Shown one piece after another: positions 28,455 to 58,849 of a stretch of 64,000 bases of DNA. Position 1 is the stretch's first letter; every line of letters begins with the position of its first letter. The position numbers were made by a program, and so were the translations under genes. Below the pieces are notes generated by a model. It saw only the letters and a program-made list of their open reading frames with translations. It was not told the origin of the DNA and did no database searches. The stretch lies in IMG/VR virus record IMGVR_UViG_3300025364_000003, positions 142,529 through 206,528 of that record; one strand, given 5' to 3'.

Positions 28455-28916
28455 ATGAAAATTTCCAAGAAACAAATAAGAACCTTGGTTCGTGAAGCAG
28501 TACGAGTGCAGCTTGATGAAATTTATGGCATTTCACAGTATGAACGTATGCTTGAGCTAAAACATCAATATGAAGACGACATTAAAGTTCTTGATAAGAT
28601 TGGTCCCGAATTATATCAAAAGATCATTGATTTTAGAGAACAGGCAAGTGATTTCAATGAATTCAAAAGGCTTGTGAGGGGCATGCCCGTTCACATGGCA
28701 AAGAAGTTTTGGGATCGCCAAATGGGCAAAGTTTCAACAGAGCGACTTGTGGAACTGCGTGATGAATGGGAAGAACTTAAAGATCGTTTCAAAGAGATAG
28801 ATGCAACAACAGAAGCTGACCGAGCTTATGGACGCAAGCGAACAAAAATTATTGATACAGAAACTGGTGAGGTCATTGGGACCGAAACGGACAAACGAGG
28901 CAGTCTGGGTTCCTGA
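28455..28916 (+). CDS. Hypothetical protein with KISKxQIR leader (putative internal head protein)
   Basis: MKISKKQIRTLVREAVRVQLDE. Confidence 0.65.
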   Translation: MKISKKQIRTLVREAVRVQLDEIYGISQYERMLELKHQYEDDIKVLDKIGPELYQKIIDFREQASDFNEFKRLVRGMPVHMAKKFWDRQMGKVSTERLVELRDEWEELKDRFKEIDATTEADRAYGRKRTKIIDTETGEVIGTETDKRGSLGS

Positions 28917-35489: not shown

Positions 35490-35558
35490 CAATTCTCTAT
35501 TGTCTAAACAATTATTTCTAAAATGCGTTCGACGTGGGTTTACTTACTATTTACCCAT

Positions 35559-36776
35559 ATGTCCGGCAATGAAACTCGACAGAATATCCCAAGAGATCCA
35601 AGGAATCCTGAACCACATGTAGATTCTGGATATGAGGGTGACGATACCTCGGATACGTTTTTGATTCCGCCAGTTGGAATTGAAGATGCGGACATGACTC
35701 TGTTCAGACTTTTTGACAAAGATATTGGATTTACTGTTCGATTAGTAGAGACGGCAAACAAAGATATCCAGATTAAAAAGCCTTTTGTAATTTTCGCTAC
35801 TGGTGAACGATTTGTGCTTGCAAAGCGATTGCGTCCACCAAGAGATAGAAACGACAAATTGATGCTTCCGGCCATTTCTATCCGAAGAACATCTATTGAA
35901 CAAACATCGCTGGACATTACTGGCAGAGGTATCAATCAGTTTACTGGCAATCTTGTCATTAAGCGACGTCTTGAAAAGGGAGACAGGGATTACCAAAACT
36001 TTATTAATAAGCTGGGGTTTAAAAACTTAAAAAATTCTTATTCTACCGAAAGAGAAACAGGCGAACTGAAAAACGACGTTTCGGTGCAGCAAGGCGGGCT
36101 TTTAGAACAGAGAACCAGTTTGAATAACATGTGGGAAATTATCACAGTACCACAGCCACAGTTTTTTACTGCAACATACGAAGTAACTTTTTGGACTTCG
36201 TTTACCCAACACATGAATTATATGATAGAAACGTTTATCTCATCGTTTCTACCAAACGATAGAATACACAAGTTGGTAACCGACAAGGGTTACTGGTTTC
36301 TTGCTTACACGCAAGAACAGTTTGCGAATCAAGAAAATATTGATGATTTCACTGAAGATGAAAGAATTTTGAGGTACTCTTTCAATGTTCAGGTTAAAGG
36401 TTATATTTTCGCACCACAGCATCCAACTAATGCTGTTCCAGTGAGAAGATGGATTTCATCGCCAACGGTAGTTTTCGACGTAAGTTCATATTCTACCGAA
36501 GTGTTGGAGAAGGAACATCTAAATCGTCCACCGCAAAAAAACAAGGACAATCCGGAAAATTTCACATTGACAGACATTGAACTGGATCCCCAAACAAAAC
36601 AGACTCCAACAACAAATGAAAGATTCGCTGTTCGAAAAGATATAATCGACCCGATCACAGGAAAGAGGAAGCGTCGTTACGTATCTATTTTAGAGTCCAA
36701 TGAAAAAAAGGGAGAGACAGTTTACAGGGCATCCGACGTTGAAACATTGGAAGAGTTTATCAAGACACTCAAATAA
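35559..36776 (+). CDS. Tail terminator/sheath stabiliser, T4 gp15-like
   Basis: PPVGIEDAD..LF, ATGERF, LPAISIRR, PQPQFFTATYEV.FWT; directly upstream of the sheaths. ATG 35559 preferred as start. Confidence 0.65.
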   Translation: MSGNETRQNIPRDPRNPEPHVDSGYEGDDTSDTFLIPPVGIEDADMTLFRLFDKDIGFTVRLVETANKDIQIKKPFVIFATGERFVLAKRLRPPRDRNDKLMLPAISIRRTSIEQTSLDITGRGINQFTGNLVIKRRLEKGDRDYQNFINKLGFKNLKNSYSTERETGELKNDVSVQQGGLLEQRTSLNNMWEIITVPQPQFFTATYEVTFWTSFTQHMNYMIETFISSFLPNDRIHKLVTDKGYWFLAYTQEQFANQENIDDFTEDERILRYSFNVQVKGYIFAPQHPTNAVPVRRWISSPTVVFDVSSYSTEVLEKEHLNRPPQKNKDNPENFTLTDIELDPQTKQTPTTNERFAVRKDIIDPITGKRKRRYVSILESNEKKGETVYRASDVETLEEFIKTLK

Positions 36777-36857: not shown

Positions 36858-39800
36858 ATGGTTAGCCAAATTTTTAACTTTCCAGGCTTCTTCGATAGAG
36901 AAATCGATCTAACAGCCCAGATTCAGGAGCCAGTAGGCGTTCCAGCTGGTGTAATTGGTGGTGCCGAACGTGGTCCGGCATTCGTCCCATTCACTGTTGG
37001 ATCATTTGCTGATTTCCGAACTCGCTTCGGCGATCTAAATCCAAGATATGCTGCGCCATACGCAGTCGATAGATTCCTGGAAAACAGGACAGCACTTACC
37101 TTCATCAGAATTCTTGGTGCGGGTGCCAATGAGACGTCAAGTGATATCGAGACAACTCGTTTGCAAGGAACAGTCAAAAATGCTGGATTCCGTCTAAGTG
37201 GAACTCTCAGTTCCGTTAACCCAGCTACTACTAATGGTGCTGTTCAATTCCTCGTCGCTCGCCACGTTGTTACTGCTTCAGAAGCACTCGGAATGCCGAT
37301 GTTTTCTGACAATAATTCACTTCTTACCTCGGGTTCGAACGACGAGGTTTACCTTACTCGTGGTGTTATTTTCGCTGCGTCAGGTACTCGAATTCAAATT
37401 CTAAATGGAGATGACAGCAACGAGCAGTACAGCAGCTTTGTTGATGACGTTGCAACTGTAAACTCTGCAAGCAGAGAATTCAAAATTGTTATTTCTTCAT
37501 CGGCTGGTGCGTCGTTTGGCAATGACGACGGATTCCCTGGCGTTAGAATTCTAACCGCTTCTCTGAATCCAAGTTCTGATAACTACTTTGCCAAGCTGAT
37601 GAATACTGATCCAGAAAGGTTCAGCGACGAAAAACATGTGGTCTATGCTGATTATGCAGTCGATGCCGAACTCGCAAATGTTGGCACTGGAAGCGGCGAT
37701 GTTGCTATTGCAAGCGGTAGCATTAACACTTCTTCTACTTCTGGCAACACCTCTCTTCCATTCCTAGAGGCGTTCGGTCGTTTTGACACCAGATTCACAA
37801 CTCCAAAAACACCTTGGTTTATCTCGCAACCATATGGCAAAACTGAGTATGACCTCTTTTACATTGAAGCTGTTGATGATGGCGCATACGCAAATCAGCG
37901 TTTCAAGATTTCTATCACCAATCTTCTCAAGTCTTCAAATGTTCGTGATAAACACGGAACTTTCACACTTGTTGTAAGAACATTTGATGATACAGATGCC
38001 GAACCACAGATTCTTGAGCAGTTCAACAACCTTTCTCTTGATCCGGATTCGGACAACTACATTGCTAAGGTTATTGGAGATAAGCGTGCTCGCTTCAACT
38101 TTGACGCTGAAGCTGAAGAAGATCGTCGCCTTCTCACCACTGGCAAGTTTGAAAACAGAAGCCGATACATTCGAGTATTTGTTTCTGACCAGGTAGCACA
38201 AAAGAAGATTCCTGAAGATGCTGTTCCATTCGGCTTCCGAGGAACTGCTCCATTGAGCACCAACTCACTTCTTTCTGATACTGCTGGGTCGGCGGCCCTA
38301 GCAAGACTTGCTTTGTCGGGTGCAACTGATCCACGTCTTGCGTGGTCTATAGTACCTCCTCTTCCATACCGTTATAAGGTAACAAGAGGAAATGCAGCAA
38401 CCAATCCGGGTTTCGAAGGTGCTCCAGGAGCAACCGAATTAACTGATGCACGTTATTTTTGGGGGGTCAAGACTTCTAGAAACACCAACGCACTGAATCC
38501 AAACATTGTCAATCTTCCAAACCAGTTGGTCAACAGCTACACTAAGTTTGCAGGTATTGAAAAACTTGATGTACTTGTTACAGGTTCAGCTAAAGATGAT
38601 TTCAACAACAATAAGTTTACGCTTGCTCGTGTTGCGCTAGGAAATGCATCACTCAATGATGTTACATCATCAGCCGCAATCCACATGAAAGAAGCTGCTT
38701 ATCTTCGTAACAGAACGCCAGATGGGTTCGAATACAAGATAACTGATGAAATTTCTGGTCTGGATAGAATTACATTTGCCACCCTTTACCAAAAGGGCAC
38801 GTCTGCTGCCGACTTCAACAAGTTCACCAACTTTGCAAAGTTTACCTCTATTCTATATGGTGGTTTCGATGGCGTCAACATTCTTGATAAGAATGCAGCT
38901 ACATTTAATGACCGTTCCACTTCAACAGAAACTGCTGGAAGCGAGGTTGGAAATGCAGCATCTACTTTCACTTCACCTGGACTTAACGAGAACGTAAACG
39001 GATTTGGTACTTCAAACCAGACTGTTTTCGCTTATCGAAGAGCTTCAGAGATTATCACTGATGCAATCGCATCTAACATCAATCTGCTTACTATTCCAGG
39101 TCAGCGTGATCCGTTGGTCACAGACTTTGCTGCTGATGAAGTTCGTGACTTTGGTCTTGCTTTCTATGCCATGGATTTACCAGCATATGACTCTGATGGT
39201 AACAGAATTTGGGACAATCAAACTTCAAGATTTATCGACATCGAACAGACTGCAAATAACTTTGAGCAGCGTGCTCTTGACAATGAGTTTGCAGGTGCTT
39301 ACTTCCCAGATTTCGTACTTGAGGATGATGTAAACAGGCGCAGAGTAACCGTTCCAGCTTCTGTTGGAGCACTTGCAGCACTTGGATTCAATGACCGTGT
39401 TGCTTATCCTTGGTTCGCACCAGCAGGCTTCAACAGAGCAGCTCTTGATTTTGTACAGCTTACAAAGACAAGAATTAAGCAACCAGAACGTGAACGTCTT
39501 TTTGACATTCACATTAACCCAATCGTCAAATTCCCTGGCGAATCTGGTTTCGTAATCTTCGCACAAAACACGCTTGAACAAGCCGAGTCTGCGCTCGGCA
39601 GTATCAATGTTGTTCGAATGTTGAATGAACTCAAGCGCAGGATAATCGAGATTGGCAACCGAGCAATCTTCGAACAGATTACTCCGGAAATTTACACTGA
39701 ACTTGATAGGAGATTCCGCAGCGTTCTTAACCTCATTTCGGCTCGTGCTGGTATTGAGAGATTTGATGTCATCGTTGATGGCAGAAACAATACAAACCTT

Positions 39801-39917
39801 GATCGTGAGAACAATAGAGTCAATGCTCGAATTGTGCTCGTTCCAACGAGGGCGGTTGAGTTCATTGCAATTGACTTCATCATTACTAGAAGCGGCGTGT
39901 CGTTCGATGCCGTATAA
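36858..39917 (+). CDS. gp18: Contractile tail sheath protein 1
   Basis: FPGFFDREIDL, GAERGPAFVP, WFAPAGFNR, INPIVKFPG..VIFAQ.TL, INVVRML, PTRAVEFIAIDF. Confidence 0.92.
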   Translation: MVSQIFNFPGFFDREIDLTAQIQEPVGVPAGVIGGAERGPAFVPFTVGSFADFRTRFGDLNPRYAAPYAVDRFLENRTALTFIRILGAGANETSSDIETTRLQGTVKNAGFRLSGTLSSVNPATTNGAVQFLVARHVVTASEALGMPMFSDNNSLLTSGSNDEVYLTRGVIFAASGTRIQILNGDDSNEQYSSFVDDVATVNSASREFKIVISSSAGASFGNDDGFPGVRILTASLNPSSDNYFAKLMNTDPERFSDEKHVVYADYAVDAELANVGTGSGDVAIASGSINTSSTSGNTSLPFLEAFGRFDTRFTTPKTPWFISQPYGKTEYDLFYIEAVDDGAYANQRFKISITNLLKSSNVRDKHGTFTLVVRTFDDTDAEPQILEQFNNLSLDPDSDNYIAKVIGDKRARFNFDAEAEEDRRLLTTGKFENRSRYIRVFVSDQVAQKKIPEDAVPFGFRGTAPLSTNSLLSDTAGSAALARLALSGATDPRLAWSIVPPLPYRYKVTRGNAATNPGFEGAPGATELTDARYFWGVKTSRNTNALNPNIVNLPNQLVNSYTKFAGIEKLDVLVTGSAKDDFNNNKFTLARVALGNASLNDVTSSAAIHMKEAAYLRNRTPDGFEYKITDEISGLDRITFATLYQKGTSAADFNKFTNFAKFTSILYGGFDGVNILDKNAATFNDRSTSTETAGSEVGNAASTFTSPGLNENVNGFGTSNQTVFAYRRASEIITDAIASNINLLTIPGQRDPLVTDFAADEVRDFGLAFYAMDLPAYDSDGNRIWDNQTSRFIDIEQTANNFEQRALDNEFAGAYFPDFVLEDDVNRRRVTVPASVGALAALGFNDRVAYPWFAPAGFNRAALDFVQLTKTRIKQPERERLFDIHINPIVKFPGESGFVIFAQNTLEQAESALGSINVVRMLNELKRRIIEIGNRAIFEQITPEIYTELDRRFRSVLNLISARAGIERFDVIVDGRNNTNLDRENNRVNARIVLVPTRAVEFIAIDFIITRSGVSFDAV

Positions 39918-39973: not shown

Positions 39974-42900
39974 ATGACTCAAATTAATTTCAAAAGTGCA
40001 GGAGTTTCAGCCAGGGTTATCAACCTTACTGGCCCAACAGCAATTCAACCTGTTGGAATCCCAGCTGGTGTGATCGGAACTGCTGTAAAGGGACCTGCAT
40101 TTGTTCCTGTAACTTTTGCAACAACGCAGGACTTTACGGTTGTATTCGGACTTCCAGAAGACAACAAGGCAAATGGACCACTTGCTGTGGGCGAGTGGCT
40201 TCGTAATAGACAAGCAGCAACTTACCTTAGGGTTCTTGGTGCTGGTCAAGCCAAGAGAAGAGAACAATCTGGAGAGAATCAGGGTAAAGTTCAGGGTGCA
40301 GGTTTTGTTGTTGGTGACGAACAGCCACAAGCTGGTGGAGCATTGGATAACAACATGTACGCCAATGAAGGGGGACCTCTAGGGCGTTTGTATTTCCTAA
40401 ACACCTTTATGTCAGAAGCAAACGGTTCGGGTTTTCTTACTGACGCTGGTCTCCCTGGTGAGGGAACGCCAATCGTTAGGGCAGTTCTTTTAGCTGCTTC
40501 CGGTGTTATCATCACCCTTTCTTCGTCACTTTCTGCATCGACAATGGTTCCAGGAGCAGCTCCAGCGTCAAACCTTGTTGCCACAGAAGAAAATAAGAGC
40601 GGTTCATTCCTAGGCTCCGTCAACCTCTCCGGCGGCAGACAGGAATTTGTGATGTTCTTGAATGGTCACAAGGGAACTGATCCTCTATTTCCCAATGTCA
40701 TTACTGCATCTTTTGATGTTGACGCACCAAATTACCTTGGCAGTGCCCTTAACACCGATCCTTTCAACCTTGAAAAGGCAGGTTACTTGCTTTATGCCGA
40801 TTACTCGGTTCATCCAAACCTTGCAACCGTTACTGGTTCTTCTGTGGTCGATACCACTACTGATGAAGTTGTAGGTGGAGGTTTGGCAGCTGGATTTGAA
40901 CCAATCGCATTCTTGGCAACTGGTTCATTGTCTCGAAACTCCGGCTCAACCGTAGTACCAAGTTATGAAAACTGGGAAGATAGATACACTACGCCAAAAT
41001 CACCTTGGATTGTTTCACAGAGGCTTGGCGGCAAGCCAAGAAATCTCTTCAGAATTCATCTTTTGGATGACGGTGCTTGGGGCAACGATCAGGTCAAATG
41101 GTCTGTTGAAAACATTGTTCCGGCAATCAATGATGTAAACCCTTATGGAACTTTCGACCTTCTCATCCGTCGTTTCAACGACATCGATAAGAAACGTGAG
41201 GCAACTGAGGCTTGGAGAGGGCTTTCACTCAATCCAAGCTCCGACAATTACATTGCTAGAGTGATTGGTGACCTCAACACCTTCTACAACTTTGATGCTG
41301 CCGAAGGTAACCAGAAGATTCAAACTACTGGCGAGTATCCAAACCAGTCCAAGGTTATCAGAGTAGAAGTCTCGCCAGACGTTGAAAACGTTGAGTTGGA
41401 TGCTTCGGCTCTTCCGCTTGGTTTCAGAGGAATTCCACACTTGGTAACCTCGGGAACTGCACCATTGGCTCCATTAGGCGAAGCACTTGCAGACAGCGTT
41501 CTTATTACTGGCTCTTCTGATCCAGCTCACAATGTCGTACAGATGCCAGTTCAGTTCCGCAGAAGCCTTAACCTTGGTTCGGTTACCAGCCGTCGTGTAG
41601 ACAAGGGCCTCTATTGGGGTATTCAGTTTACTCGTCAGCTTTCAGTTGAAGAGCCAAACTCAACAACCGAGCCAGAAAGAACTATTGCCAACTTCACCAA
41701 GTTCTTCCCTAAGCATCAGACTGATTGGTTGAATGTTGTCGTCAGCGACAATGAAGGAGTGGCAGATGCGGCAGAAACCGGTATTCTTGATGCGGATAGG
41801 TTCAATAACAACCTATTCTCTCTTGAGAACATCAGGATCGTAAGAGATCCGATCACGAATCTTGCTGACACTACCCAGCTTGTAAGTTGGAGTTATGTAA
41901 GAGCCGGAAACGTAGCTACCTCTGGTTCGGTTAGAGCATTGACAGCTGACGATTTGTCGGATTCATCTGTAAGGCAGGTTGCTAAGTTCAGCGGAATTAT
42001 CCAGGGCGGATTTGATGGTGTTAGAATCTTTGATGAAGACACTGCCAATCTTACCAACCTCGCAATTATCGAAGAAATGGACAACACAAACAGGGGAGTG
42101 TCGAATGGTCCTACCGTAAAGGCTTATGATACCGCTTTGGATATCATTGCCGACGACACCGAAACTGATATCCAACTTCTTACCATCCCAGGAATTAGAC
42201 ATCCACAGATCACCGATGACGCTCTACAGCTTATCGAGGAAAGATTTGATGCAATGTACATCATGGATCTTCCAGAGTATGACACCACAAATCAACTCGT
42301 TACTGCTTCCTCACAGGATTTGAGCGTTAGATTTACCGCAAATCAGCACCGTGATCGAGGTTTGAACACTTCCTTCGGAGCAGCTTACTTCCCAGACGTA
42401 ATCTTGAGGGATACACTCAACAACACTATTCGACAGGTTCCGCCTTCGGTTGCTGTTCTTGGTGCATTCGGTCTCAATGATGCAGTCGGATTCCCATGGT
42501 TTGCCCCAGCAGGTTTTGCACGTGGCGCCCTACAGACAACTGAAGAATCTACGCTTCCATTGTCCCGTGACAACATGGATGCGCTTCAAGATGTCAAGAT
42601 TAACCCACTTGTATCCTTTGCAGGATCGGATGGTGTTGTAGTCTGGGGTCAGCGTACTCTACTTGCTCGTGATTCTGCACTTGAGAGAGTCAATGTACGT
42701 AGACTTCTCATTCAACTTAGAAGAGATGTTCGCCGTGTTGCTCGACGCTTCGTATTCGAACCTGGTCGTGCCGAAACGCTTGCAAGATTTTCTCAGTTGG
42801 TAAACCCAATCTTGAAGAGGGTGCAGGACCAGAGAGGCGTGGAGAGATTCCTTGTAAGAATTGACACCACAACTACTACACAAGCCGACATTGAAAACAG

Positions 42901-43003
42901 AACGGTTCGTGGAAAGATTTTCCTTGTTCCAACCAGAACTTTGGAATTCTTGTCCATCGACTTCGTCGTTACCAATCAAGGCAATTTCGTTTCATCGCAA
43001 TAA
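39974..43003 (+). CDS. gp18: Contractile tail sheath protein 2
   Basis: SAGVSARVINL, GTAVKGPAFVP, WFAPAGFARG, INPLVSF..GVVVWGQRTL, VNVRRLL, PTRTLEFLSIDF. Confidence 0.92.
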   Translation: MTQINFKSAGVSARVINLTGPTAIQPVGIPAGVIGTAVKGPAFVPVTFATTQDFTVVFGLPEDNKANGPLAVGEWLRNRQAATYLRVLGAGQAKRREQSGENQGKVQGAGFVVGDEQPQAGGALDNNMYANEGGPLGRLYFLNTFMSEANGSGFLTDAGLPGEGTPIVRAVLLAASGVIITLSSSLSASTMVPGAAPASNLVATEENKSGSFLGSVNLSGGRQEFVMFLNGHKGTDPLFPNVITASFDVDAPNYLGSALNTDPFNLEKAGYLLYADYSVHPNLATVTGSSVVDTTTDEVVGGGLAAGFEPIAFLATGSLSRNSGSTVVPSYENWEDRYTTPKSPWIVSQRLGGKPRNLFRIHLLDDGAWGNDQVKWSVENIVPAINDVNPYGTFDLLIRRFNDIDKKREATEAWRGLSLNPSSDNYIARVIGDLNTFYNFDAAEGNQKIQTTGEYPNQSKVIRVEVSPDVENVELDASALPLGFRGIPHLVTSGTAPLAPLGEALADSVLITGSSDPAHNVVQMPVQFRRSLNLGSVTSRRVDKGLYWGIQFTRQLSVEEPNSTTEPERTIANFTKFFPKHQTDWLNVVVSDNEGVADAAETGILDADRFNNNLFSLENIRIVRDPITNLADTTQLVSWSYVRAGNVATSGSVRALTADDLSDSSVRQVAKFSGIIQGGFDGVRIFDEDTANLTNLAIIEEMDNTNRGVSNGPTVKAYDTALDIIADDTETDIQLLTIPGIRHPQITDDALQLIEERFDAMYIMDLPEYDTTNQLVTASSQDLSVRFTANQHRDRGLNTSFGAAYFPDVILRDTLNNTIRQVPPSVAVLGAFGLNDAVGFPWFAPAGFARGALQTTEESTLPLSRDNMDALQDVKINPLVSFAGSDGVVVWGQRTLLARDSALERVNVRRLLIQLRRDVRRVARRFVFEPGRAETLARFSQLVNPILKRVQDQRGVERFLVRIDTTTTTQADIENRTVRGKIFLVPTRTLEFLSIDFVVTNQGNFVSSQ

Positions 43004-43035
43004 TTGAATAAATTTCCCCATAAGAGAGGTAAATA

Positions 43036-43140
43036 ATGAAGGGTCTACTCCACCGTTTAATAAATCTTTTCAACTCTGAGCACTGTTGCTGCTGTTGTGG
43101 CTGCTGTCAGTGCCGGAACTGCAAGGGCAGCTGTAAGTGA
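43036..43140 (+). CDS. 34-aa Cys-rich peptide (metallothionein-like composition), not in ORF track
   Basis: AGAGAGGT SD; MKGLLHRLINLFNSEHCCCCCGCCQCRNCKGSCK; TGA stop overlaps the GTG start of the next gene. Confidence 0.7.
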   Translation: MKGLLHRLINLFNSEHCCCCCGCCQCRNCKGSCK

Positions 43141-43991
43141 ATGATAGGGATAGAATACAAGGATTCATTTCTGACTTAGTCAAAGAAGAATTGACTGAGG
43201 TATCTCCTGTATTTTATCCCACAATCAAAAAGGGAATAGAAGCTGGCCGTGAGGCTTCTCGTAGACAGGCTTCGGCCTACAGGGGAAGGCACGGCCAAAC
43301 CTTTTCTGATGAACTTGCTCAAATACGTCGAGATTCCAAGCGTAAAAGGGATAGGCATCATAAGATGCTGTCGCTTTCCAAGCATCTGAAAAAAGTTTTC
43401 GGAAATAATGCATATGGTGGCTCTGCACTTGCCACTGTAGAAATTTCTAACGATTTTAAAGCTGATGTTAAAGCTGAATTTGTGAGCGTTATGGGAATTG
43501 ATAATGTCAAGTTTGTAGTTTCAATAAAGAAAAACGGCAAAGAAATTCTTACCAAAGAATTTGTTGCTGGATTAGGGGCAAAACAAAGTGTAGCAAGGTT
43601 CATTAAGAAATTTCAGGAAAAATTGCAAGAGGATGCAGCAATGAAGGTTACGAAAGCGCAACTAAAAGAAATGGTCCGCAAGATCATTAGAAAAAAATTA
43701 ACAGAAATGGATCTTGGTGAAAAAAGTCGATCTACTACAGGGGCTGACAGGAGGATGAGTCCATCTCAACTTGAAAAGCATCTTGAAAAGGAAAGAGAAA
43801 GATCAAAACAAGCCAAGGTTGTTAAAAAACGACAAGCAATGAAGCAATCGGCTCGTGGTATGGAATTAGAGAGTCGCATAGATATTGATCGAGATGTTGA
43901 CAACGAAGAAATGGTTGATGCTAAAGAAGAAGAATATCTTACCAAGCTCGAAAAGTTAATTCTTCAAAGTGAAAAGGAAGGGCTTTGCTAA
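43137..43991 (+). CDS. Hypothetical protein with two leader-like helices (putative internal head protein)
   Basis: IQGFISDLVKEELTE at the N-terminus; MKVTKAQLKEMVRKIIRKKLTE from 43641. Confidence 0.65.
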   Translation: MNDRDRIQGFISDLVKEELTEVSPVFYPTIKKGIEAGREASRRQASAYRGRHGQTFSDELAQIRRDSKRKRDRHHKMLSLSKHLKKVFGNNAYGGSALATVEISNDFKADVKAEFVSVMGIDNVKFVVSIKKNGKEILTKEFVAGLGAKQSVARFIKKFQEKLQEDAAMKVTKAQLKEMVRKIIRKKLTEMDLGEKSRSTTGADRRMSPSQLEKHLEKERERSKQAKVVKKRQAMKQSARGMELESRIDIDRDVDNEEMVDAKEEEYLTKLEKLILQSEKEGLC

Positions 43992-43992
43992 A

Positions 43993-44550
43993 ATGACTAC
44001 TATAAAACAAATAATTGAAGAAGCTGTCAAGGAAGCACTTGACCCAGTTGGGAAAACTGAAACGGGGAAAAAGGTAGGGGTCGGTCAAATTCGTGACATC
44101 GACAACGATGGTGATATTGATAGTTCTGATGCGTATCTTGCATATCGTCGAAAAAAAATTACACAGGCAATGAAAAAAGAAGATCGTGAACTCAATGAAA
44201 AAACAATGACTTGGGGTGATCTTCCATCGGAAGATGTTTTTGAAGATTTAATGGATGGCAAAGCTTTCAACATGAAACTTCAGGGTGCCGACTCTCTTGC
44301 GTTTGAATATGCCATGACTCTATCTGATAATCCAGGAGCGGGAAGTACAGCATCTGCGGGCAGTCTTAGAGCTACCATAGAAGCCCTTATCAACGCTCCA
44401 GAGCCAGACGAACTTTCTGATGACCAATACGAAGAGGTTGAAAATGTTCTTGACGAATGGAACGACAGATACGGGGATGTGAGCATTGAAGAAACTGCGT
44501 GGTCTTTGGCTTCTGGTATTATGGAAGTCCTTGGAATTGAATGGATTTGA
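43993..44550 (+). CDS. Hypothetical protein with DxDxDG EF-hand-like loop
   Basis: MTTIKQIIEEAVKEAL leader; DIDNDGDIDSSDAYL. Confidence 0.65.
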   Translation: MTTIKQIIEEAVKEALDPVGKTETGKKVGVGQIRDIDNDGDIDSSDAYLAYRRKKITQAMKKEDRELNEKTMTWGDLPSEDVFEDLMDGKAFNMKLQGADSLAFEYAMTLSDNPGAGSTASAGSLRATIEALINAPEPDELSDDQYEEVENVLDEWNDRYGDVSIEETAWSLASGIMEVLGIEWI

Positions 44551-44559
44551 TAGAGTAAA

Positions 44560-45054
44560 ATGCCAAAGAGTAAATATCCAAAAAGCGTACAAGATCTACC
44601 AGAAGACGACTACAGTCAGTGGACGGCAGTTTATCACAGTGCACGTGACGGGGGCGACAGCAAAGAAACCGCAGCAAAAAAAGCTTGGGGTGCTGTTAAG
44701 GAATCCGGCTTGCAAGAAAGTGGTGAAGATAATCCATGCTGGGATGGTTACGAAATGGTCGGTATGAAAACCCAAAACGGGAAAGAAGTACCTAACTGCG
44801 TTCCGAAAAATGAATCAAAAAAACCTGTACGTATTTCAAAAACGCAGCTTAAAGAAATGGTAAAGCGGGCCGTTAGAAATCAATTACAAGAGGCTTCCAC
44901 TGTTCGAAAGCGTCAAATGATACTTGATCGGTTTAGAACCGAAGCAAACCTTTCAACTTATGAATTGCTAGAAGACGTCCTTGAATTCATTGATGAAAAG
45001 ACTTGGCAGAAAGTATTGCAGGGCATTGGTAACAAATATGGTTATCGACTTTAA
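44560..45054 (+). CDS. ChaB-like domain fused to a PCWxGY..VPNCVP module
   Basis: YPKSVQDLPE...YHSA...ETAAKKAWGAVK; PCWDGYEMVGMK..GKEVPNCVP; RISKTQLKEMVKRAVRNQLQE. Confidence 0.65.
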   Translation: MPKSKYPKSVQDLPEDDYSQWTAVYHSARDGGDSKETAAKKAWGAVKESGLQESGEDNPCWDGYEMVGMKTQNGKEVPNCVPKNESKKPVRISKTQLKEMVKRAVRNQLQEASTVRKRQMILDRFRTEANLSTYELLEDVLEFIDEKTWQKVLQGIGNKYGYRL

Positions 45055-48538: not shown

Positions 48539-50461
48539 ATGAAGACTTTCACTTTAGAGCAACTCGCAGAAGGCGTACACCGTCGCTCGCTTGGTGCAGA
48601 CTCACCACGACTCGTAAAGAAGTGGGGAGCAACTGGTCTTCTTGAGGGCCTAAAAGGCATGAACCGAGATGGCATGGCACGTCTTCTTGAGAACCAGGCA
48701 GCTGAGCTTCTCAAGGAAACCAACGCTTTGTCCCTTGGTGGTGCTTCTTTGACCTCAAGCGGGAAGATTGCAGGTTTCACAAACGTTGCATTCCCAATCG
48801 TTCGCCGTGTTTTCGCAGGTTTGATTTCAAACGAGATCGTGTCGGTTCAGCCAATGAGCCTTCCAACCGGTCTTCTTTTCTACCTCGATTACACTTACGG
48901 CAGCTCGGTTGGTGGTGACGCAGGAACCGCAGCTAACCAGTTTGCAACAACTAGCGTTGTAGATCCATCAACTTACACCAGCCAGGATTCCGTATACAAC
49001 AACCCACGTGGTGTTGGCGTACGTTCTGGTTCTCTTGCAACCGGTGGACAGTATGACCTTGTAGGTCATGGTTACTCCAAGGTTCACAAGCAGAGCCGTT
49101 TCCTTTCTGGTTCAACCGACTCTGTTGGTTACTGGGCATCTGGCTCCATTTGGACCCCAGGTGGCACAGTAGACACCGCTGATGACTTCGAAGGTCTCAA
49201 CGCACGTTTCGTCATGTACGATACTCGTGTTGAAAACGACCTTACCGATGGCGTACTTGATTACTGCTTCGTGTTTGTCAGCGCATCTGAGTTTACCGAC
49301 AAGATCAACGGTGCTGACCTCAACAACCTCAACCAGATTGCACTCACCGGTTTCGGTGCAGCAACCAACTCTGCTGTTGAGTGGGGAGAGAAGTATCAAG
49401 GTGGTCGAGGCGTGCTTAACCTTCGTCAGATGAACCAGCGTGGTAACTGGAACTCAGCAACTGGTATCTTCACACCAGATCCGCTTAACGGTTCACACGT
49501 GCTTCACGTAGTTCGTCTTGCAAATGCAGGTACCGCACCAGCACCTGATGGAGCTGTCGGTAATGCAGTAACTGCTTCGGCAGCTATCGCAGACGCACTC
49601 AGCGTAAACTCTGACGGTTCAACTCTTACGATTCCAAGCTTCGAGTCTGACTTCGCAGTCGACGCAAGCCCACGTATCCCAGAGGTTGACATCCGCATTG
49701 AGTCCACCAGCGTTACGGCACAAACCCGTAAGCTCAGGGCTCGTTGGTCGCCAGAAATGGCTCAGGATCTCACAGCATTCTACTCAATCGATGTAGAAGT
49801 TGAGCTTACAAACATTCTCTCCGAGATGATTACGCTTGACATTGACCGTGAAATCTTGAACGACCTTCTCACCCAGGCAGGAGCAGCAAACCTCTACTGG
49901 TCCCGAGCACCAGGTAAGCTTGTCAACAAGTTCACCGGCGCAGAGGCTCTCCAGAGCAGCACGCTTTCTCCAGGCCCAATGGCATTCGTAAACATTCAAG
50001 AGTGGTACCAGACCCTCCTTGAGACTGTTACGGACGCAGCAAACACCATTCACCGTAAGACACTCCGTGGTTCCGGTAACTTCATTGTTACTTCCCCAGA
50101 TGTCTGCACCATCCTTGAGCACCTTGTTGCCTACAAGCCTTCCTACAGAGTAGATGCTGACGGTCAGGTTCGTGACAACATGGTAATCGGAGCAGAGGCA
50201 GTTGGTACTTTGAACAACCGTTACACGGTCTACAAAGACCCATATTTCCCAAGCAACAAGCTCTTGATCGGATTGAAGGGTAACACCTTCCTTGAGTCAG
50301 GATTCATCTACGCACCATACGTGCCACTTATCCTTACTCCAGTTATCTACGCTCAGGAAGACTTTACTCCACGTAAGGGCGTCATGACCCGATACGGTAA
50401 GAAGATGGTCAGAAATGACTTCTACGCAACCGTAACTGTTCTTGACATGGGTATAATTTAA
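48539..50461 (+). CDS. gp23: Major capsid protein, T4 gp23-like
   Basis: KKWGATGLLEGL, FPIVRRVF, SVQPMSLPTGLLFYLD, TRKLRARWSPE.AQDL, EITLDIDREIL, YAPYVPL, FTPRKGVMTRYGK. Confidence 0.96.
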   Translation: MKTFTLEQLAEGVHRRSLGADSPRLVKKWGATGLLEGLKGMNRDGMARLLENQAAELLKETNALSLGGASLTSSGKIAGFTNVAFPIVRRVFAGLISNEIVSVQPMSLPTGLLFYLDYTYGSSVGGDAGTAANQFATTSVVDPSTYTSQDSVYNNPRGVGVRSGSLATGGQYDLVGHGYSKVHKQSRFLSGSTDSVGYWASGSIWTPGGTVDTADDFEGLNARFVMYDTRVENDLTDGVLDYCFVFVSASEFTDKINGADLNNLNQIALTGFGAATNSAVEWGEKYQGGRGVLNLRQMNQRGNWNSATGIFTPDPLNGSHVLHVVRLANAGTAPAPDGAVGNAVTASAAIADALSVNSDGSTLTIPSFESDFAVDASPRIPEVDIRIESTSVTAQTRKLRARWSPEMAQDLTAFYSIDVEVELTNILSEMITLDIDREILNDLLTQAGAANLYWSRAPGKLVNKFTGAEALQSSTLSPGPMAFVNIQEWYQTLLETVTDAANTIHRKTLRGSGNFIVTSPDVCTILEHLVAYKPSYRVDADGQVRDNMVIGAEAVGTLNNRYTVYKDPYFPSNKLLIGLKGNTFLESGFIYAPYVPLILTPVIYAQEDFTPRKGVMTRYGKKMVRNDFYATVTVLDMGII

Positions 50462-50645: not shown

Positions 50646-51539
50646 ATGAAAATATTTTTACACGGATATGCAAATAAGCGTGGTATTTATAAAATTACTA
50701 ATACAAAAAATGGACGTTATTATTATGGATCCGCTTCTCGTTTAAAAGAACGAGCTTATTCTCATCGGGACGATTTGCGCAGAAATAGGCATGCGAATTT
50801 GTTTTTACAAAGAGATTATAACAAATGTGGCGAAGATGCATTTATATTTGAAGCAATAGAAACAGTAGATGGAGCCAGGGAAGAACAACTCGCTAAAGAA
50901 CAGGCTTACCTTGATAAATTTTTTGATGGAGGAAACGAATGTTACAACCTTTGTCCAAAAGCAGAAAGTAGAGAAGGTAGCAAAAATGTTCGTCCATTTA
51001 ACCCAGAAACAGACGGGCGAGTAACATCACGAACGCCAGAAGTGTGTGCTATTGTAAGCAAGAAAAACAAAAAGACGTGGAACACACCAAAGAAAAAAGA
51101 AGAAGCTCTCAAGAACGCTCAAAAGCGTTGGGATAACCATTCTGCTGATGTAACCGTCACCAATAAAAAGACTGGTGAAACTGTTACCATTGAAGGTTCT
51201 GTCAGGTCTTGGTGCCAAGAAAGAAATCTCTCTTATAAGTCATTTCATTTAATGCTCAAAGGCAAGACTAAATCTTCAGGCGGTTGGTTTCTTGGCACGG
51301 AAGAACCGACTTACGTGGAACGCAAGGGTGAAAAAAGAAAACCTTTGTCGGATGAACATAGAGCCAAGATAGCGGGTGGTAAATATGCTGGTGTTGTCTT
51401 GAAGAACAAGGTGTCTGGTGAGATGTTTGTGGTTGGTGAGAATGCCAAAGCTGATTGCCGTGAGCGTGGCATTTCATATTCAAGCTTTGCAAAAATGATG
51501 AGTGGTAAGTGTAAAAGTGCTTCTGGTTGGATAGTCTAA
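50646..51539 (+). CDS. Free-standing GIY-YIG homing endonuclease
   Basis: GIYKITNTKNGRYYYGSA..R, HAN..LQRDYNK.GEDAF, EQAYLD, YNL; two C-terminal SYxSF..M..GK.KS..GW repeats. Confidence 0.9.
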   Translation: MKIFLHGYANKRGIYKITNTKNGRYYYGSASRLKERAYSHRDDLRRNRHANLFLQRDYNKCGEDAFIFEAIETVDGAREEQLAKEQAYLDKFFDGGNECYNLCPKAESREGSKNVRPFNPETDGRVTSRTPEVCAIVSKKNKKTWNTPKKKEEALKNAQKRWDNHSADVTVTNKKTGETVTIEGSVRSWCQERNLSYKSFHLMLKGKTKSSGGWFLGTEEPTYVERKGEKRKPLSDEHRAKIAGGKYAGVVLKNKVSGEMFVVGENAKADCRERGISYSSFAKMMSGKCKSASGWIV

Positions 51540-57624: not shown

Positions 57625-58470
57625 GTGTTTAAGTGCCCTTTGTGCAAAAACCAATATGAAAAACTTATTTCTTTGTCTGTCCATTACAGAAAAGGGCACA
57701 AGAAAAAGTCAAAAGATTTAATTGTTGACTTGTATTACAATGGCAGAGAGCCCACGTGTGCTTGTGGTTGTGGCGGGGAAGTAAAATTTCTTGATATAAC
57801 TCGTGGGTTTCGTGAATTTATTCATGGACACGCAGCACGCATACCAGAAAAAAATAATTTTGTTTCAAACAAAGCCCAACAAAACAGCGCTAAAACACGT
57901 AAAAAGATGATTGAAAGTGGAGGCTGGAAACCATTTCACCTAAAAGAAACTAGTGAACATTGGGGCAAAGGTTTATCAAAAGAAACCGACGACCGCATAG
58001 CCAAAATGGCTAACTCCATTAAAACAAATAAAGTTGAAATTGAAAAACGTTCAAAACGTATGCGCAAAGGACGTTTAGATGGAACAATACCGACACTTCA
58101 CAAAGAGAACCATAGCCAATGGAAAGGTGGTATCAGCCCACTAAATCAATATTGTCGTAGTAGTATTAAACTTTATTCAAATTGGAAATATCCTTTGCTT
58201 AAAGCGGCAAAATTTCAATGTGTCATGTGTAAAAAACCTGGTCCTGGCTTGGAAATACATCACAACAAAGAAACAATGTCTTCCATAATTCGTAAATTTG
58301 CTAAAAAATTTAAATGGGATCATTATTACAACAGCAATGCACCAGCAAATGATCAAAATTTGATTAATATCAAAGATCAAATTGCAGAAGCCGTTGCTGA
58401 CTACCACATTCAAAACAATGTGTCCGGCGTTGTCCTGTGTTCCAAATGTCACAGTAAAGAACATAACTAA
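57625..58470 (+). CDS. Free-standing HNH-type homing endonuclease with N-terminal zinc finger
   Basis: CPLC..HYRKGH, CACGCG..FIHGHA, SQWKGG, CVMC...EIHHNKE...VVLCSKCHSKEH. Confidence 0.8.
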   Translation: MFKCPLCKNQYEKLISLSVHYRKGHKKKSKDLIVDLYYNGREPTCACGCGGEVKFLDITRGFREFIHGHAARIPEKNNFVSNKAQQNSAKTRKKMIESGGWKPFHLKETSEHWGKGLSKETDDRIAKMANSIKTNKVEIEKRSKRMRKGRLDGTIPTLHKENHSQWKGGISPLNQYCRSSIKLYSNWKYPLLKAAKFQCVMCKKPGPGLEIHHNKETMSSIIRKFAKKFKWDHYYNSNAPANDQNLINIKDQIAEAVADYHIQNNVSGVVLCSKCHSKEHN

Positions 58471-58489
58471 TTTCAGCTTTGCAACCCAG

Positions 58490-58520
58490 AAAAGACCTGG
58501 CCAAAAGCCAGGTCTTTTCT
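58490..58520 (+). terminator. Intrinsic terminator
   Basis: AAAAGACCTGGC-CAAAA-GCCAGGTCTTTT. Confidence 0.8.
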
Positions 58521-58543
58521 ATTTAAGCTTGTCGGAGTATGAA

Positions 58544-58849
58544 ATGAAAATAACCAAGTCACAACTTAGAGAAATGATCCGAGAAGCCATCAATGAACAG
58601 GTTGGCGGAAACGATATTCTACAACAAGACTTAGGAGGAGAAGGAAAAGAGCTTCTCGATACTTTTATTCAATCTATGGATGAAGCAGTACAAGCTTGGT
58701 ACGCATTACACTATTGGCTTGAACCGTCTGAAGAAGCAGATGTAGCAATGTTACAAGAGTTAGGTAAGGAAGTCGGGAATTTTATTGTTGATGAGAACTT
58801 GACTGCATGGCTTAACAGCCTTGCAGAAAAAGCAAAAGCTGACAAGTAA
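58544..58849 (+). CDS. Hypothetical protein with KITKSQLRE leader
   Basis: ATG 58544 with GGAG SD: MKITKSQLREMIREAINEQ. Confidence 0.7.
   Translation: MKITKSQLREMIREAINEQVGGNDILQQDLGGEGKELLDTFIQSMDEAVQAWYALHYWLEPSEEADVAMLQELGKEVGNFIVDENLTAWLNSLAEKAKADK

What the first reader, a model, noticed from the sequence alone, without database searches (positions are those of the whole stretch)
43036..43140. Unannotated 34-aa peptide with 10 cysteines, directly after the second sheath gene
Seen: MKGLLHRLINLFNSEHCCCCCGCCQCRNCKGSCK. It has a strong SD (AGAGAGGT), a five-Cys string, 10 Cys in the last 18 residues, and a TGA stop overlapping the next GTG start. Both TGT and TGC codons are used, so it is not a simple repeat expansion. 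Established: such Cys density typifies metallothioneins. Inference: a phage metallothionein-like metal or redox buffer, or a Cys-rich virion cement peptide, with an amphipathic N-terminal helix ending in Glu.
Basis: partly seen in the sequence, partly recalled or inferred. Interest (0 to 1): 0.75.

Follow-up and report, generated by a model that had tools for sequence, protein, structure and literature searches.

The report
Conserved ten-cysteine phage micro-protein
The 34-codon reading frame is a real, strongly conserved and so far unnamed gene found in more than 170 pieces of T4-like phage DNA from seawater and salt lakes; it encodes a short helix followed by exactly ten cysteines, most likely a tiny metal-binding protein, and its position behind the tail-sheath gene is incidental.

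Summary
The ORF at 43036-43140 is not chance.

- **Conservation.** The same peptide sits at the same place in the nearest relative (sheath 84% identical). The family occurs in about 90 IMG/VR viral contigs and at least 89 metagenome contigs, giving 148 distinct peptides.
- **Sequence.** The consensus is M-K-x-x-L-H-[RK]-L-x-N-L-F-N-x-x-H-CCCCC-G-CC-x-C..., and 140 of 148 peptides have exactly 10 Cys.
- **Coding evidence.** Synonymous sites are saturated (pS 0.82) while amino acids are held (pN 0.27). Each Cys column uses TGT and TGC in mixed proportions. A Shine-Dalgarno-like motif precedes 70 of 75 distinct loci.
- **Carriers.** They are T4-like myoviruses: 9 of 9 near-complete carriers have a gp23-type capsid gene.
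- **Context.** The neighbours vary. Most often the gene lies between the primase and SbcCD genes. It also follows DNA polymerase, prohead protease, a NifU-like gene, M50 peptidase, baseplate and sheath genes. It is therefore not a sheath accessory.
- **Databases.** No Pfam, PHROG, NCBIfam or PDB family matches, and gene callers almost never call it.

Best reading: a two-part micro-protein, with a docking helix and a metallothionein-like metal-thiolate cluster. Metal binding is inferred, not shown. The attenuator reading fails its tests. The RiPP reading finds no phage-encoded maturase.

The parts
43023..43030 (+). Shine-Dalgarno-like AGAGAGGT (GAGG core 43026-43029, 6 nt before the ATG)
   Evidence: Read directly. 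An SD-like motif at the same distance occurs in 70 of 75 distinct family loci.
43036..43140 (+). 34-codon gene for the 10-Cys micro-protein (stop TGA 43138-43140)
   Evidence: Orthologue at the same position in L006. Family of 148 distinct peptides. Window versus L006 over the first 27 codons: pS 0.73, pN 0.14.
43036..43083 (+). N-terminal module, residues 1-16 (MKGLLHRLINLFNSEH): amphipathic helix with conserved L5, H6, R/K7, L8, N10, L11, F12, N/D13 and H16
   Evidence: Column counts with synonymous codon variation. Family-wide pS 0.82 versus pN 0.27. AlphaFold2 places a helix at residues 3-11, but at low confidence (pLDDT 63). The motif is never found attached to any other C-terminus (42 of 42).
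43081..43134 (+). His16 plus the 10-Cys module (H-CCCCC-G-CC-Q-C-RN-C-KG-S-C): proposed metal-thiolate cluster ligands
   Evidence: Exactly 10 Cys in 140 of 148 distinct family peptides, despite three different C-terminal layouts. Core composition is C 62%, G 13%, with aromatic residues near 0. Every Cys column uses both TGT and TGC (TGC 47-78%).
43137..43140 (+). GTGA overlap: the stop of the sORF and the GTG start of the next gene (tight packing, possibly translational coupling)
   Evidence: Overlaps or gaps of at most 3 nt to the next gene recur in about 30 of 75 loci.
43137..43991 (+). Downstream 284-aa Lys/Arg/Glu-rich ORF, a context gene. It carries the 'K-x-T-K-x-Q-L-K-x-[MI]-[VI]-[RK]-K' motif shared by many genes that flank the sORF in other phages
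   Evidence: Its homologue in L004 (36% identical) follows sheath-2 directly, with no sORF between them.
39974..43003 (+). Tail sheath paralogue 2 (1009 aa), the upstream context gene
   Evidence: phrog_23, E 1.3e-53. 33% identical to paralogue 1 at 36858-39917.

Best explanation
The ORF is a real, translated accessory gene of a large clade of T4-like myoviruses from marine and saline waters. It encodes a micro-protein of 31-39 residues, longer in some variants, with two parts.

(1) A 16-residue N-terminal amphipathic helix (M-K-x-x-L-H-[RK]-L-x-N-L-F-N-x-x-H). It has one conserved hydrophobic face and one conserved polar face (His and Asn).

(2) A C-terminal module holding exactly ten cysteines (H-CCCCC-G-CC-x-C..., then either x-x-G-C-C, x-x-C-x-G-x-C or C-C).

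Proposed mechanism, inferred rather than shown: in the reducing host cytoplasm the ten thiolates, probably with His16 and possibly His6, wrap one defined polynuclear metal-thiolate cluster. The arithmetic resembles a metallothionein domain, for example four divalent ions on about 11 ligands as in SmtA (Zn4Cys9His2), or a larger Cu(I) cluster. The helix docks this small metal module onto a partner protein, or onto copies of itself. In about 7% of family members a C-terminal AT-hook-like tail (RRGRPRKK) additionally tethers the peptide to DNA.

In the window phage the gene lies between sheath gene 2 and the next gene. No promoter-like or terminator-like site separates them, so all three are probably co-transcribed. 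That position is lineage-specific and says nothing about function.

Shown: the gene is real, conserved and under purifying selection; it is phage-specific; its context is variable; its Cys count is fixed. Inferred: metal binding, cluster stoichiometry and the docking role of the helix.

The confidence given (0.5) is for the metal-cluster mechanism. That the ORF is a real conserved gene I put at about 0.95.
For: **Real gene**
- Orthologue at the same site in L006.
- About 84 of 87 viral and about 89 of 120 metagenome pattern hits are the same peptide.
- All 42 hits to the N-terminal-only pattern are family members.
- Conserved residues use varied synonymous codons.
- pS 0.82 versus pN 0.27 in the 14 N-terminal codons, which the Cys pattern did not select.
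- SD-like motif in 70 of 75 loci.

**Phage-specific**
- Only 2 of 20 pattern hits in 185,579 prokaryote species genomes are family members. Both MAGs concerned also hold a T4 gp23-type capsid gene.
- gp23 is present in 9 of 9 near-complete carriers sampled and in the 3. psbA is absent.

**Metal-cluster reading**
- Exactly 10 Cys in 140 of 148 distinct peptides, although the C-terminal spacing comes in three layouts. The count is conserved, not the spacing.
- The core is 62% Cys and 13% Gly, the rest mostly small or charged residues, with virtually no aromatics.
- CC, CxC and CxxC motifs are the metallothionein hallmark (PMC10119931).
- H16 is invariant and H6 is present in 73 of 76 sequences.
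- SmtA is a precedent for a four-metal cluster on 9 Cys plus 2 His (PMC10119931).
- AlphaFold2 gives only an N-terminal helix and no fold for the Cys part, as expected for an apo metal-dependent peptide.
- A NifU-like Fe-S scaffold gene lies within 2 kb in 4 loci.

**The helix belongs to this protein**
- It is never found on another cargo.
Against: - No metal-binding data exist.
- No sequence match to any metallothionein model, or to any Pfam, NCBIfam, PHROG or PDB entry, even at E up to 1-10.
- Five consecutive Cys cannot all chelate one ion, and no known metallothionein has such a run.
- The conserved Phe and two His are atypical for classical metallothioneins.
- No consistent metal-related neighbour: NifU is near in only 4 of 83 loci.
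- No expression data. Only DNA runs from hypersaline-lake samples hold the sequence.
- The gene is not core: two 78-82% complete genomes of the same capsid clade lack it, so its role is dispensable or conditional.
Confidence: 0.5

Rival explanations
1. Precursor of a ribosomally made, post-translationally modified peptide (RiPP). The conserved 16-residue N-terminus would be a leader recognised by a maturase. The Cys-rich C-terminus would be the core that becomes cross-linked or heterocyclised, as in SCIFF and other ranthipeptides, FibroRumin-type peptides or methanobactin.
For: - Leader-plus-Cys-rich-core architecture and a size typical of such precursors.
- ESM Atlas feature neighbours include SCIFF (PF13165) and FibroRumin-target (PF27848) clusters, but only at scores of 0.65.
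- An M50 peptidase gene is the immediate upstream neighbour in 5 loci, and in 6 it lies within 0.5 kb.
Against: - Atlas scores of 0.65-0.70 are below the level that the tool itself calls a lead.
- No match to the SCIFF or any other precursor model.
- No conserved neighbouring enzyme across 83 loci.
- Radical SAM is absent from 2 of 3 near-complete carrier genomes. MbnB/TglH-type enzymes are absent from 5 of 5.
- Residues between the Cys are variable, and no Ser/Thr or other acceptor residue is conserved.
Confidence: 0.1
2. A packaged or DNA-associated effector peptide. The N-terminal helix would act like the capsid-targeting sequence of T4 internal proteins, or as a docking helix for a replisome or nucleoid protein. 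The peptide would then travel with, or act on, DNA, whether or not it holds metal.
For: - Carriers are T4-like phages.
- T4 internal proteins share only a short N-terminal targeting sequence ahead of diverse bodies (PMC3012670).
- The sORF is embedded among many small genes that share only an N-terminal 'MK[IL]TKxQLKQIIKEE' helix.
- In L049 and L099 it lies directly after the prohead protease gene, and in the window it lies in the tail/head module.
- 11 of 148 variants end in an AT-hook-like RRGRPRKK tail.
- Its commonest home is the island between primase and SbcCD.
- Residues 8-12, L-phi-N-L-F, resemble the beta-clamp motif Q-phi-x-[LM]-[FL] (PMC11139829).
Against: - Its helix differs from the neighbours' motif and is never attached to other cargo (42 of 42), so it is not a generic tag.
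- No conserved [LI]-x-E protease site follows it.
- Most loci lie in replication modules rather than head modules.
- The Gln that defines the clamp motif is Leu in 71 of 76 sequences.
- Most members have no basic tail.
Confidence: 0.15
3. A cis-acting cysteine sensor. Ribosomes would stall on the run of Cys codons when Cys-tRNA is scarce, and this would tune translation of the overlapping downstream gene. The precedent is the polycysteine attenuator sORFs of mycobacteria.
For: - Five consecutive Cys codons, 10 in all.
- The stop overlaps the next start (GTGA) in the window.
- Overlaps of 1-28 nt with the next gene occur in many loci.
- Precedent: bioRxiv 10.1101/834739.
Against: - The 14 non-Cys N-terminal codons are under strong amino-acid selection (pN/pS about 0.33) in every context.
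- The C-terminal Cys count is fixed at 10.
- Downstream genes are unrelated to one another, are not sulfur genes, and in many loci lie 200-1000 nt away or on the other strand.
- The sORF has its own SD and sits inside an operon rather than at a leaderless 5' end.
- The RNA fold of 43010-43190 is no more stable than shuffled sequence (z = +0.62).
Confidence: 0.03
4. A chance ORF created by a TGY/CTG-type trinucleotide repeat in an intergenic spacer.
For: - TGYTGYTGY resembles a (CTG)n microsatellite.
- About 30 non-family pattern hits in GC-rich DNA are exactly that kind of sequence.
Against: The frame, start, SD, N-terminal sequence and Cys count are all conserved across 148 distinct sequences, while synonymous sites are saturated.
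Confidence: 0.01

Closest known systems
Bacterial metallothioneins (SmtA/BmtA type, Zn4Cys9His2 cluster; also MymT-type Cu(I) metallothioneins)
   Same: - A very small, Cys-dominated peptide with CC, CxC and CxxC motifs.
- Gly and small polar residues between the Cys, with no aromatics in the Cys region.
- His residues conserved alongside the Cys.
- The ligand count (10 Cys plus 1-2 His) is close to that of a four-metal cluster (PMC10119931).
   Different: - No detectable homology to any metallothionein model.
- About half the length of SmtA.
- An uninterrupted run of five Cys.
- An obligatory, highly conserved N-terminal amphipathic helix with Phe.
- Encoded only by phages.
- Metal binding unproven.
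Polycysteine attenuator sORFs of mycobacteria (Ms5788A/Rv0815A; bioRxiv 10.1101/834739)
   Same: A very short ORF with a run of consecutive Cys codons, placed immediately before and overlapping another gene.
   Different: - Those sORFs are leaderless first ORFs placed upstream of cysteine-metabolism operons. They act through an RNA duplex that hides the next SD.
- Here there is an SD and an internal operon position. Downstream genes are heterogeneous, no significant RNA structure is found, and the whole peptide is under strong amino-acid selection.
Cys-rich RiPP precursors (SCIFF/ranthipeptides, FibroRumin targets, methanobactin MbnA)
   Same: 30-50 residues, with a conserved N-terminal part followed by a Cys-rich C-terminal part.
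   Different: - No model match.
- No linked radical SAM/SPASM or MbnB-type maturase.
- Maturase families are absent from most complete carrier genomes.
T4 internal proteins (IPI-III) with an N-terminal capsid-targeting sequence
   Same: Small, non-core, hypervariable-locus genes of T4-like phages that begin with 'MK' and a short helix. They sit among many other genes built as 'conserved N-terminal helix plus variable body' (PMC3012670).
   Different: - The helix is unique to this family.
- No [LI]-x-E cleavage site.
- The body is not variable but nearly invariant.
- Virion presence is unknown.
AT-hook DNA-binding motif (R-G-R-P core in a basic run)
   Same: 11 of 148 family members end in ...RRGRP[RK]KK.
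   Different: The window's peptide and about 93% of the family lack it. It is an add-on to the family, not its defining part.

Membership tests
Metallothionein (operational class) | Low molecular mass (under 10 kDa) and very high Cys content, arranged as CC, CxC and CxxC | tested here: met
   34 aa with 10 Cys (29%). The motifs CCCCC, CC, CxC and CxxC are read directly and are family-wide.
Metallothionein (operational class) | Few or no aromatic or bulky hydrophobic residues | tested here: inconclusive
   Met for the Cys module (aromatics near 0%). Not met for the N-terminal helix (conserved Phe12 and several Leu).
Metallothionein (operational class) | Binds several metal ions in metal-thiolate clusters | not testable with these tools
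   Needs metal titration, native MS or ICP-MS of the peptide.
Bacterial metallothionein sequence families (Pfam models) | Significant match to a family profile | tested here: not met
   No Pfam hit at E up to 10 for five family members. No PDB chain at E up to 10 with the family profile.
Polycysteine attenuator sORF | First, leaderless ORF of a transcript, lying upstream of cysteine or sulfur metabolism genes | tested here: not met
   An SD is present and there is no promoter-like or terminator-like site between the sheath gene and the sORF. Downstream genes are heterogeneous and not sulfur-related.
Polycysteine attenuator sORF | The Cys-codon tract pairs with the downstream ribosome-binding site in a stable RNA duplex | tested here: not met
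   The minimum free energy of 43010-43190 is -40.5 kcal/mol against a shuffle mean of -43.2, z = +0.62.
Polycysteine attenuator sORF | Selection acts on the Cys codons rather than on the rest of the peptide | tested here: not met
   The N-terminal 14 codons have pN 0.27 against pS 0.82, and seven non-Cys positions are at least 80% conserved.
SCIFF / radical-SAM-modified Cys-rich RiPP precursor | Match to a precursor model (PF13165 / TIGR03973 or similar) | tested here: not met
   No Pfam or NCBIfam hit. There is only an Atlas feature similarity of 0.65.
SCIFF / radical-SAM-modified Cys-rich RiPP precursor | A cognate maturase encoded next to the precursor, or at least in the same genome | tested here: not met
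   No conserved neighbour. PF04055 is absent from 2 of 3 near-complete carriers. PF05114 is absent from 5 of 5. A host-encoded maturase cannot be excluded.
T4-type internal protein with a capsid-targeting sequence | An N-terminal targeting helix shared with other packaged proteins, followed by a prohead-protease site ([LI]-x-E) | tested here: not met
   The N-terminal motif occurs only on this peptide (42 of 42). No conserved Glu lies at the end of the helix.
T4-type internal protein with a capsid-targeting sequence | Present inside the virion | not testable with these tools
   Needs virion proteomics of a carrier phage. No cultured carrier was found.
Beta-clamp binding motif Q-phi-x-[LM]-[FL] | Gln at position 1 of the motif | tested here: not met
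   Residues 8-12 are L-phi-N-L-F, and position 8 is Leu in 71 of 76 sequences. Motif definition from PMC11139829.

The most novel reading that the evidence does not exclude
This would be a new class of phage-only micro-metalloprotein that works on the DNA replication and recombination machinery or on DNA itself. One version is a zinc (or Fe-S) donor or store that metalates phage zinc proteins, such as the CHC2-finger primase whose gene it so often follows, in metal-poor seawater. Another version is a metal-stiffened helix that plugs a host or phage replisome protein, with the AT-hook-tailed variants delivering it to DNA.
Probability: 0.2. Interest if true: 0.85.

Novelty: new variant of a known kind. 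Interest (0 to 1): 0.7.

Why it matters
**A blind spot in annotation.** An abundant, nearly invariant gene of ocean and salt-lake T4-like phages is missing from virtually all annotation because it is only 31-39 codons long. DNA scans find about 180 copies. Collections of 15 billion predicted proteins hold about a dozen related calls (9-10 clusters), none of them named. This is a concrete example of how much conserved biology sits below gene-caller length limits.

**If it binds metal.** It would be the first metallothionein-like protein family known to me that is specific to phages. Its fixed ten-Cys design is small enough to synthesise and solve. That would open a direct test of whether phages manage trace metals (Zn, Cu, Fe) during infection in metal-limited waters.

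**If it does something else.** If it instead targets a host or phage protein or DNA, it is a new minimal effector scaffold.

Tried and rejected
- **tblastn of the peptide against 50,697 phage records:** no match, probably because the low-complexity filter masks the Cys run.
- **blastn of a family member against the same records:** only chance hits with E of about 0.1-3. The best, Pelagibacter phage Mosig, is an AT-rich coincidence, and that genome's two CCCC runs are not family members.
- **Closest annotated relatives by capsid and primase** (LR756508.1, Flavobacterium phage immuto, Microcystis phage Mel-JY01): no HCCCC pattern at all. No cultured carrier was therefore found.
- **Profile searches.** The representatives library gave only 8 hits. 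Four of these are longer ORFs (71-155 aa): three carry the peptide at their C-terminal end and one at its N-terminus, and they look like gene-calling artefacts.
- **ESM Atlas:** scores of at most 0.70, below the level of a usable lead.
- **AlphaFold2:** pLDDT 63, showing only an N-terminal helix, so no fold search was attempted.
- **Signals around the sORF.** No sigma-70-like promoter or intrinsic terminator. The T4 late-promoter box TATAAATA has no + strand copy in the window. No RNA structure.
- **Sequencing runs:** only DNA runs from hypersaline-lake samples hold the region and no RNA run does.
- **tRNA:** no tRNA-Cys in the 206-kb record.
- **Clamp-binding-motif idea:** rejected as a membership claim because the defining Gln is missing (PMC11139829).
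- **DNA polymerase C-termini:** inspected for a shared motif, uninformative.

Full report
**1. The observation.**
The window holds an ATG-to-TGA frame at 43036-43140 that translates to MKGLLHRLINLFNSEHCCCCCGCCQCRNCKGSCK.
- AGAGAGGT lies at 43023-43030, with its GAGG core 6 nt before the ATG.
- There are five consecutive Cys and ten Cys in the last 18 residues.
- Both TGT and TGC codons are used.
- The stop overlaps the GTG start of the next ORF as GTGA (43137-43140).
- The second of two roughly 1000-aa tail sheath genes (phrog_23) ends 32 nt upstream.

Among all six-frame ORFs of the 206.5-kb virus record that contains the window, this is the lone outlier for Cys density. It has 10 Cys per 18 aa, and the next best has 7, in a frame inside the sheath-2 gene.

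**2. Whose genome.**
The window is bases 142529-206528 of an IMG/VR record judged 45% complete. The same phage also occurs as a 460,987-bp contig. Public runs that hold the region are hypersaline-lake metagenomes. The record carries a T4 gp23-type major capsid gene (window 48539-50461) and no psbA. The closest annotated relatives are an uncultured 484-kb phage, Flavobacterium phage immuto and Microcystis phage Mel-JY01, at 42-48% capsid identity.

**3. Conservation at the same site.**
An alignment of sheath-2 with its homologue in L004 retrieved eleven related loci.
- The closest non-identical relative, L006 (sheath 84% identical), has MKAFVHRLVNLFNSKHCCCCCGCCNCAKGCCK at exactly this position. 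Over the first 27 codons the two genes differ at 73% of synonymous sites but only 14% of non-synonymous sites.
- Other relatives (sheath 60-75% identical: L004, L007/L008, L010, L011, L012) have only a short spacer, or a spacer carrying a GC-rich hairpin followed by a T run, after the sheath gene.
- The gene at this site is therefore a lineage-specific gain, or a repeated loss.

**4. A large family.**
- A degenerate DNA pattern for H-C-C-C-C-C-G-C-C found 87 stretches in IMG/VR. About 84 of them encode the same small peptide.
- To remove the bias of that pattern, I scanned for the N-terminal motif alone (M-K-x-x-L-H-[KR]-L-x-N-L-F-[ND]). It gave 42 stretches, all family members. Of these, 36 carry the exact Cys motif and 6 carry near variants such as HCCCCCKCC, HCCCCCYCC and HCSCCCETC.
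- Pooled, there are 148 distinct peptides in 170 loci, with a modal length of 31-34 residues.

**5. It is protein-coding.**
- Conserved residues are written with varied codons: Leu as TTA, CTA, CTT or TTG; His as CAC or CAT; Asn as AAT or AAC; Phe as TTT or TTC. Every Cys column uses both TGC and TGT (TGC 47-78%).
- In the 14 N-terminal codons that no Cys pattern selected, mean pS is 0.82 and mean pN is 0.27.
- A GGAG/GAGG/AGGA-type motif sits at ribosome-binding distance in 70 of 75 distinct loci.
- These results exclude a chance ORF or a simple repeat.

**6. It is phage-specific and not sheath-linked.**
- In one genome for each of 185,579 prokaryote species, the pattern gives 20 hits. Eighteen are out-of-frame junk in GC-rich DNA. 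The other two lie on contigs of two MAGs, each of which also holds a T4 gp23-type gene. One of those contigs (101,404 bp) has the same length as an IMG/VR viral contig that carries the family's N-terminal motif.
- gp23 is found in 27 of 39 sampled carrier contigs and in all 9 that are at least 90% complete.
- Neighbours differ widely:
  - a DnaG-type primase within 4 kb upstream in 18 loci;
  - an SbcCD-like nuclease within about 5 kb in 21 loci;
  - an M50 peptidase immediately upstream in 5 loci (6 within 0.5 kb);
  - DNA polymerase within 0.6 kb upstream in 4 loci;
  - prohead protease within 0.5 kb in 3 loci;
  - a NifU-like Fe-S scaffold within 2 kb in 4 loci;
  - baseplate wedge in 2 loci;
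  - sheath in 2 loci.
- Two 78-82% complete genomes of the same capsid clade lack the gene, so it is accessory.

**7. It is unknown to databases.**
- Pfam, PHROGs and NCBIfam give no hit at permissive thresholds, and a family profile finds no PDB chain.
- HMMER against 1.84 billion representatives finds 8 proteins. The word-indexed search of 5.8 billion clusters finds 9. None is named, and the window's own peptide is not among them.
- Full-text searches for the motif and for phage metallothioneins returned nothing relevant.

**8. Anatomy and what it suggests.**
- *N-terminal module.* Residues 1-16 have L5, L8, L11 and F12 on one face, with H6, N10, N/D13 and H16 conserved on another. AlphaFold2 gives a helix at residues 3-11, at low confidence.
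- *Cys module.* The C-terminal module comes in three layouts...CxCxxGCC...CxCxxCxGxC and ...CTCCCKEK. Yet 140 of 148 peptides have exactly ten Cys.
  - Conservation of the count rather than the spacing is what a single defined metal-thiolate cluster would impose.
  - The composition between the Cys is Gly, Ser, Ala, Lys and Glu, with no aromatics. Together with the CC, CxC and CxxC motifs, this is the metallothionein signature (PMC10119931).
  - Ten Cys plus the invariant His16 give 11 ligands. That equals the ligand count of the four-zinc cluster of cyanobacterial SmtA, Zn4Cys9His2 (PMC10119931).
  - This is inference; no tool here can test metal binding.
- *AT-hook tails.* Eleven of the 148 variants add a C-terminal RRGRP[RK]KK tail, an AT-hook-like DNA-binding motif.

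**9. Rivals.**
- *Cys-sensing attenuator* (precedent: bioRxiv 10.1101/834739). It fails on four counts: position and SD, unrelated downstream genes, absence of RNA structure (z = +0.62), and strong selection on non-Cys residues.
- *RiPP precursor.* The architecture fits, and weak Atlas neighbours (0.65) point to SCIFF and FibroRumin. However, no maturase is linked. Radical SAM is missing from 2 of 3 near-complete carriers, and MbnB-type enzymes are missing from 5 of 5.
- *Packaged or DNA-associated effector.* The T4-like setting favours it, as do the surrounding genes built as 'MK-helix plus variable body' (compare T4 internal proteins, PMC3012670), the protease-adjacent loci and the AT-hook tails. 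Against it, the helix is exclusive to this peptide and no protease site follows it. This reading is compatible with metal binding and cannot be excluded.
- *Clamp-binding motif.* The resemblance (L-phi-N-L-F) lacks the defining Gln (PMC11139829).

**10. Verdict.**
The proposed tie to the sheath or virion is not supported. The family is new to databases and, as far as the searched literature shows, undescribed.

Noticed in passing
window 43137-43991, 44560-45054, 28455-28916, 58382-58849; L017-L101 flanks: Many small genes around the sORF, in the window and in dozens of related contigs (39 flanking ORFs in one BLAST cluster), share only a helix motif of about 16 residues, M-K-[IL]-T-K-x-Q-L-[KR]-Q-I-I-K-E-E-[LV]. 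It is N-terminal or internal and is followed by unrelated sequence. Sister motifs such as MKLIMENWKRFLKE and MKELLSEWRKYITE end in [LI]-x-E. This recalls (from memory, untested here) the T4 capsid-targeting sequence with its prohead-protease site, so these may be a large repertoire of packaged internal proteins.
   Followed up: partly
window 36858-39917 and 39974-43003: Two tandem tail-sheath paralogues of about 1000 aa each. They are only 33% identical to each other, but the pair is conserved in relatives (L004, L006). Both are much longer than the PHROG tail-sheath profile they match (phrog_23, 496 positions). A weak gp15-like (sheath stabiliser) ORF precedes them at 35523-36776.
   Followed up: partly
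window 50646-51539: An ORF with a GIY-YIG nuclease domain sits directly downstream of the gp23-type major capsid gene (48539-50461). It is probably a homing endonuclease.
   Followed up: no
window 48539-50461: The major capsid protein is 640 aa. The Pfam Gp23 match is split into two parts (profile positions 1-85 and 106-355), with a large insertion between them. The same enlarged form (578-665 aa) is found across the carrier clade, which has at least 598 contigs in IMG/VR.
   Followed up: partly
L063, L067, L074, L085, L248, L266, L269, L271, L305, L308, L335, L345: A sub-family of the Cys peptide carries a C-terminal AT-hook-like tail (...CN-x(1-9)-R-[RK]-G-R-P-[RK]-K-K). Another member, in the Pelagibacter-labelled MAG contig L115, has a Lys-rich insert between its Cys.
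   Followed up: partly
L045 (IMGVR_UViG_3300030419_007010): One contig has two copies 140 nt apart. One is intact. The other is shortened (MKKILNKKHCCCCCGCCKWPIPLRYFAHLL), has lost most of the helix and has left the frame after the CC. It is apparently a decaying duplicate.
   Followed up: no
L111 (PBIO01000025.1) and L115 (NHHP01000006.1): Two MAGs, labelled Halobacteriovorax sp. and Candidatus Pelagibacter sp. TMED166, contain 101-kb and 116-kb contigs that look like T4-like phage contigs. Each contig carries the Cys peptide, and each MAG holds a gp23-type capsid gene. They are probably binning contaminants or host-associated phage DNA.
   Followed up: partly
window 44093-44172 (inside ORF 43969-44550): An 80-nt stretch matches 'hypothetical protein' genes of several Synechococcus cyanophages at 77-80% identity. 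It encodes ...GQIRDIDNDGDIDSSDAY..., an Asp/Gly-rich loop that from memory resembles a DxDxDG calcium-binding loop, and it matches PHROGs of unknown function.
   Followed up: no
L026, L065, L047, L031: A NifU-like Fe-S cluster assembly gene (phrog_8429, E 1e-42) lies within 2 kb of the Cys-peptide gene in four carrier contigs. It is the only metal-handling neighbour seen.
   Followed up: partly
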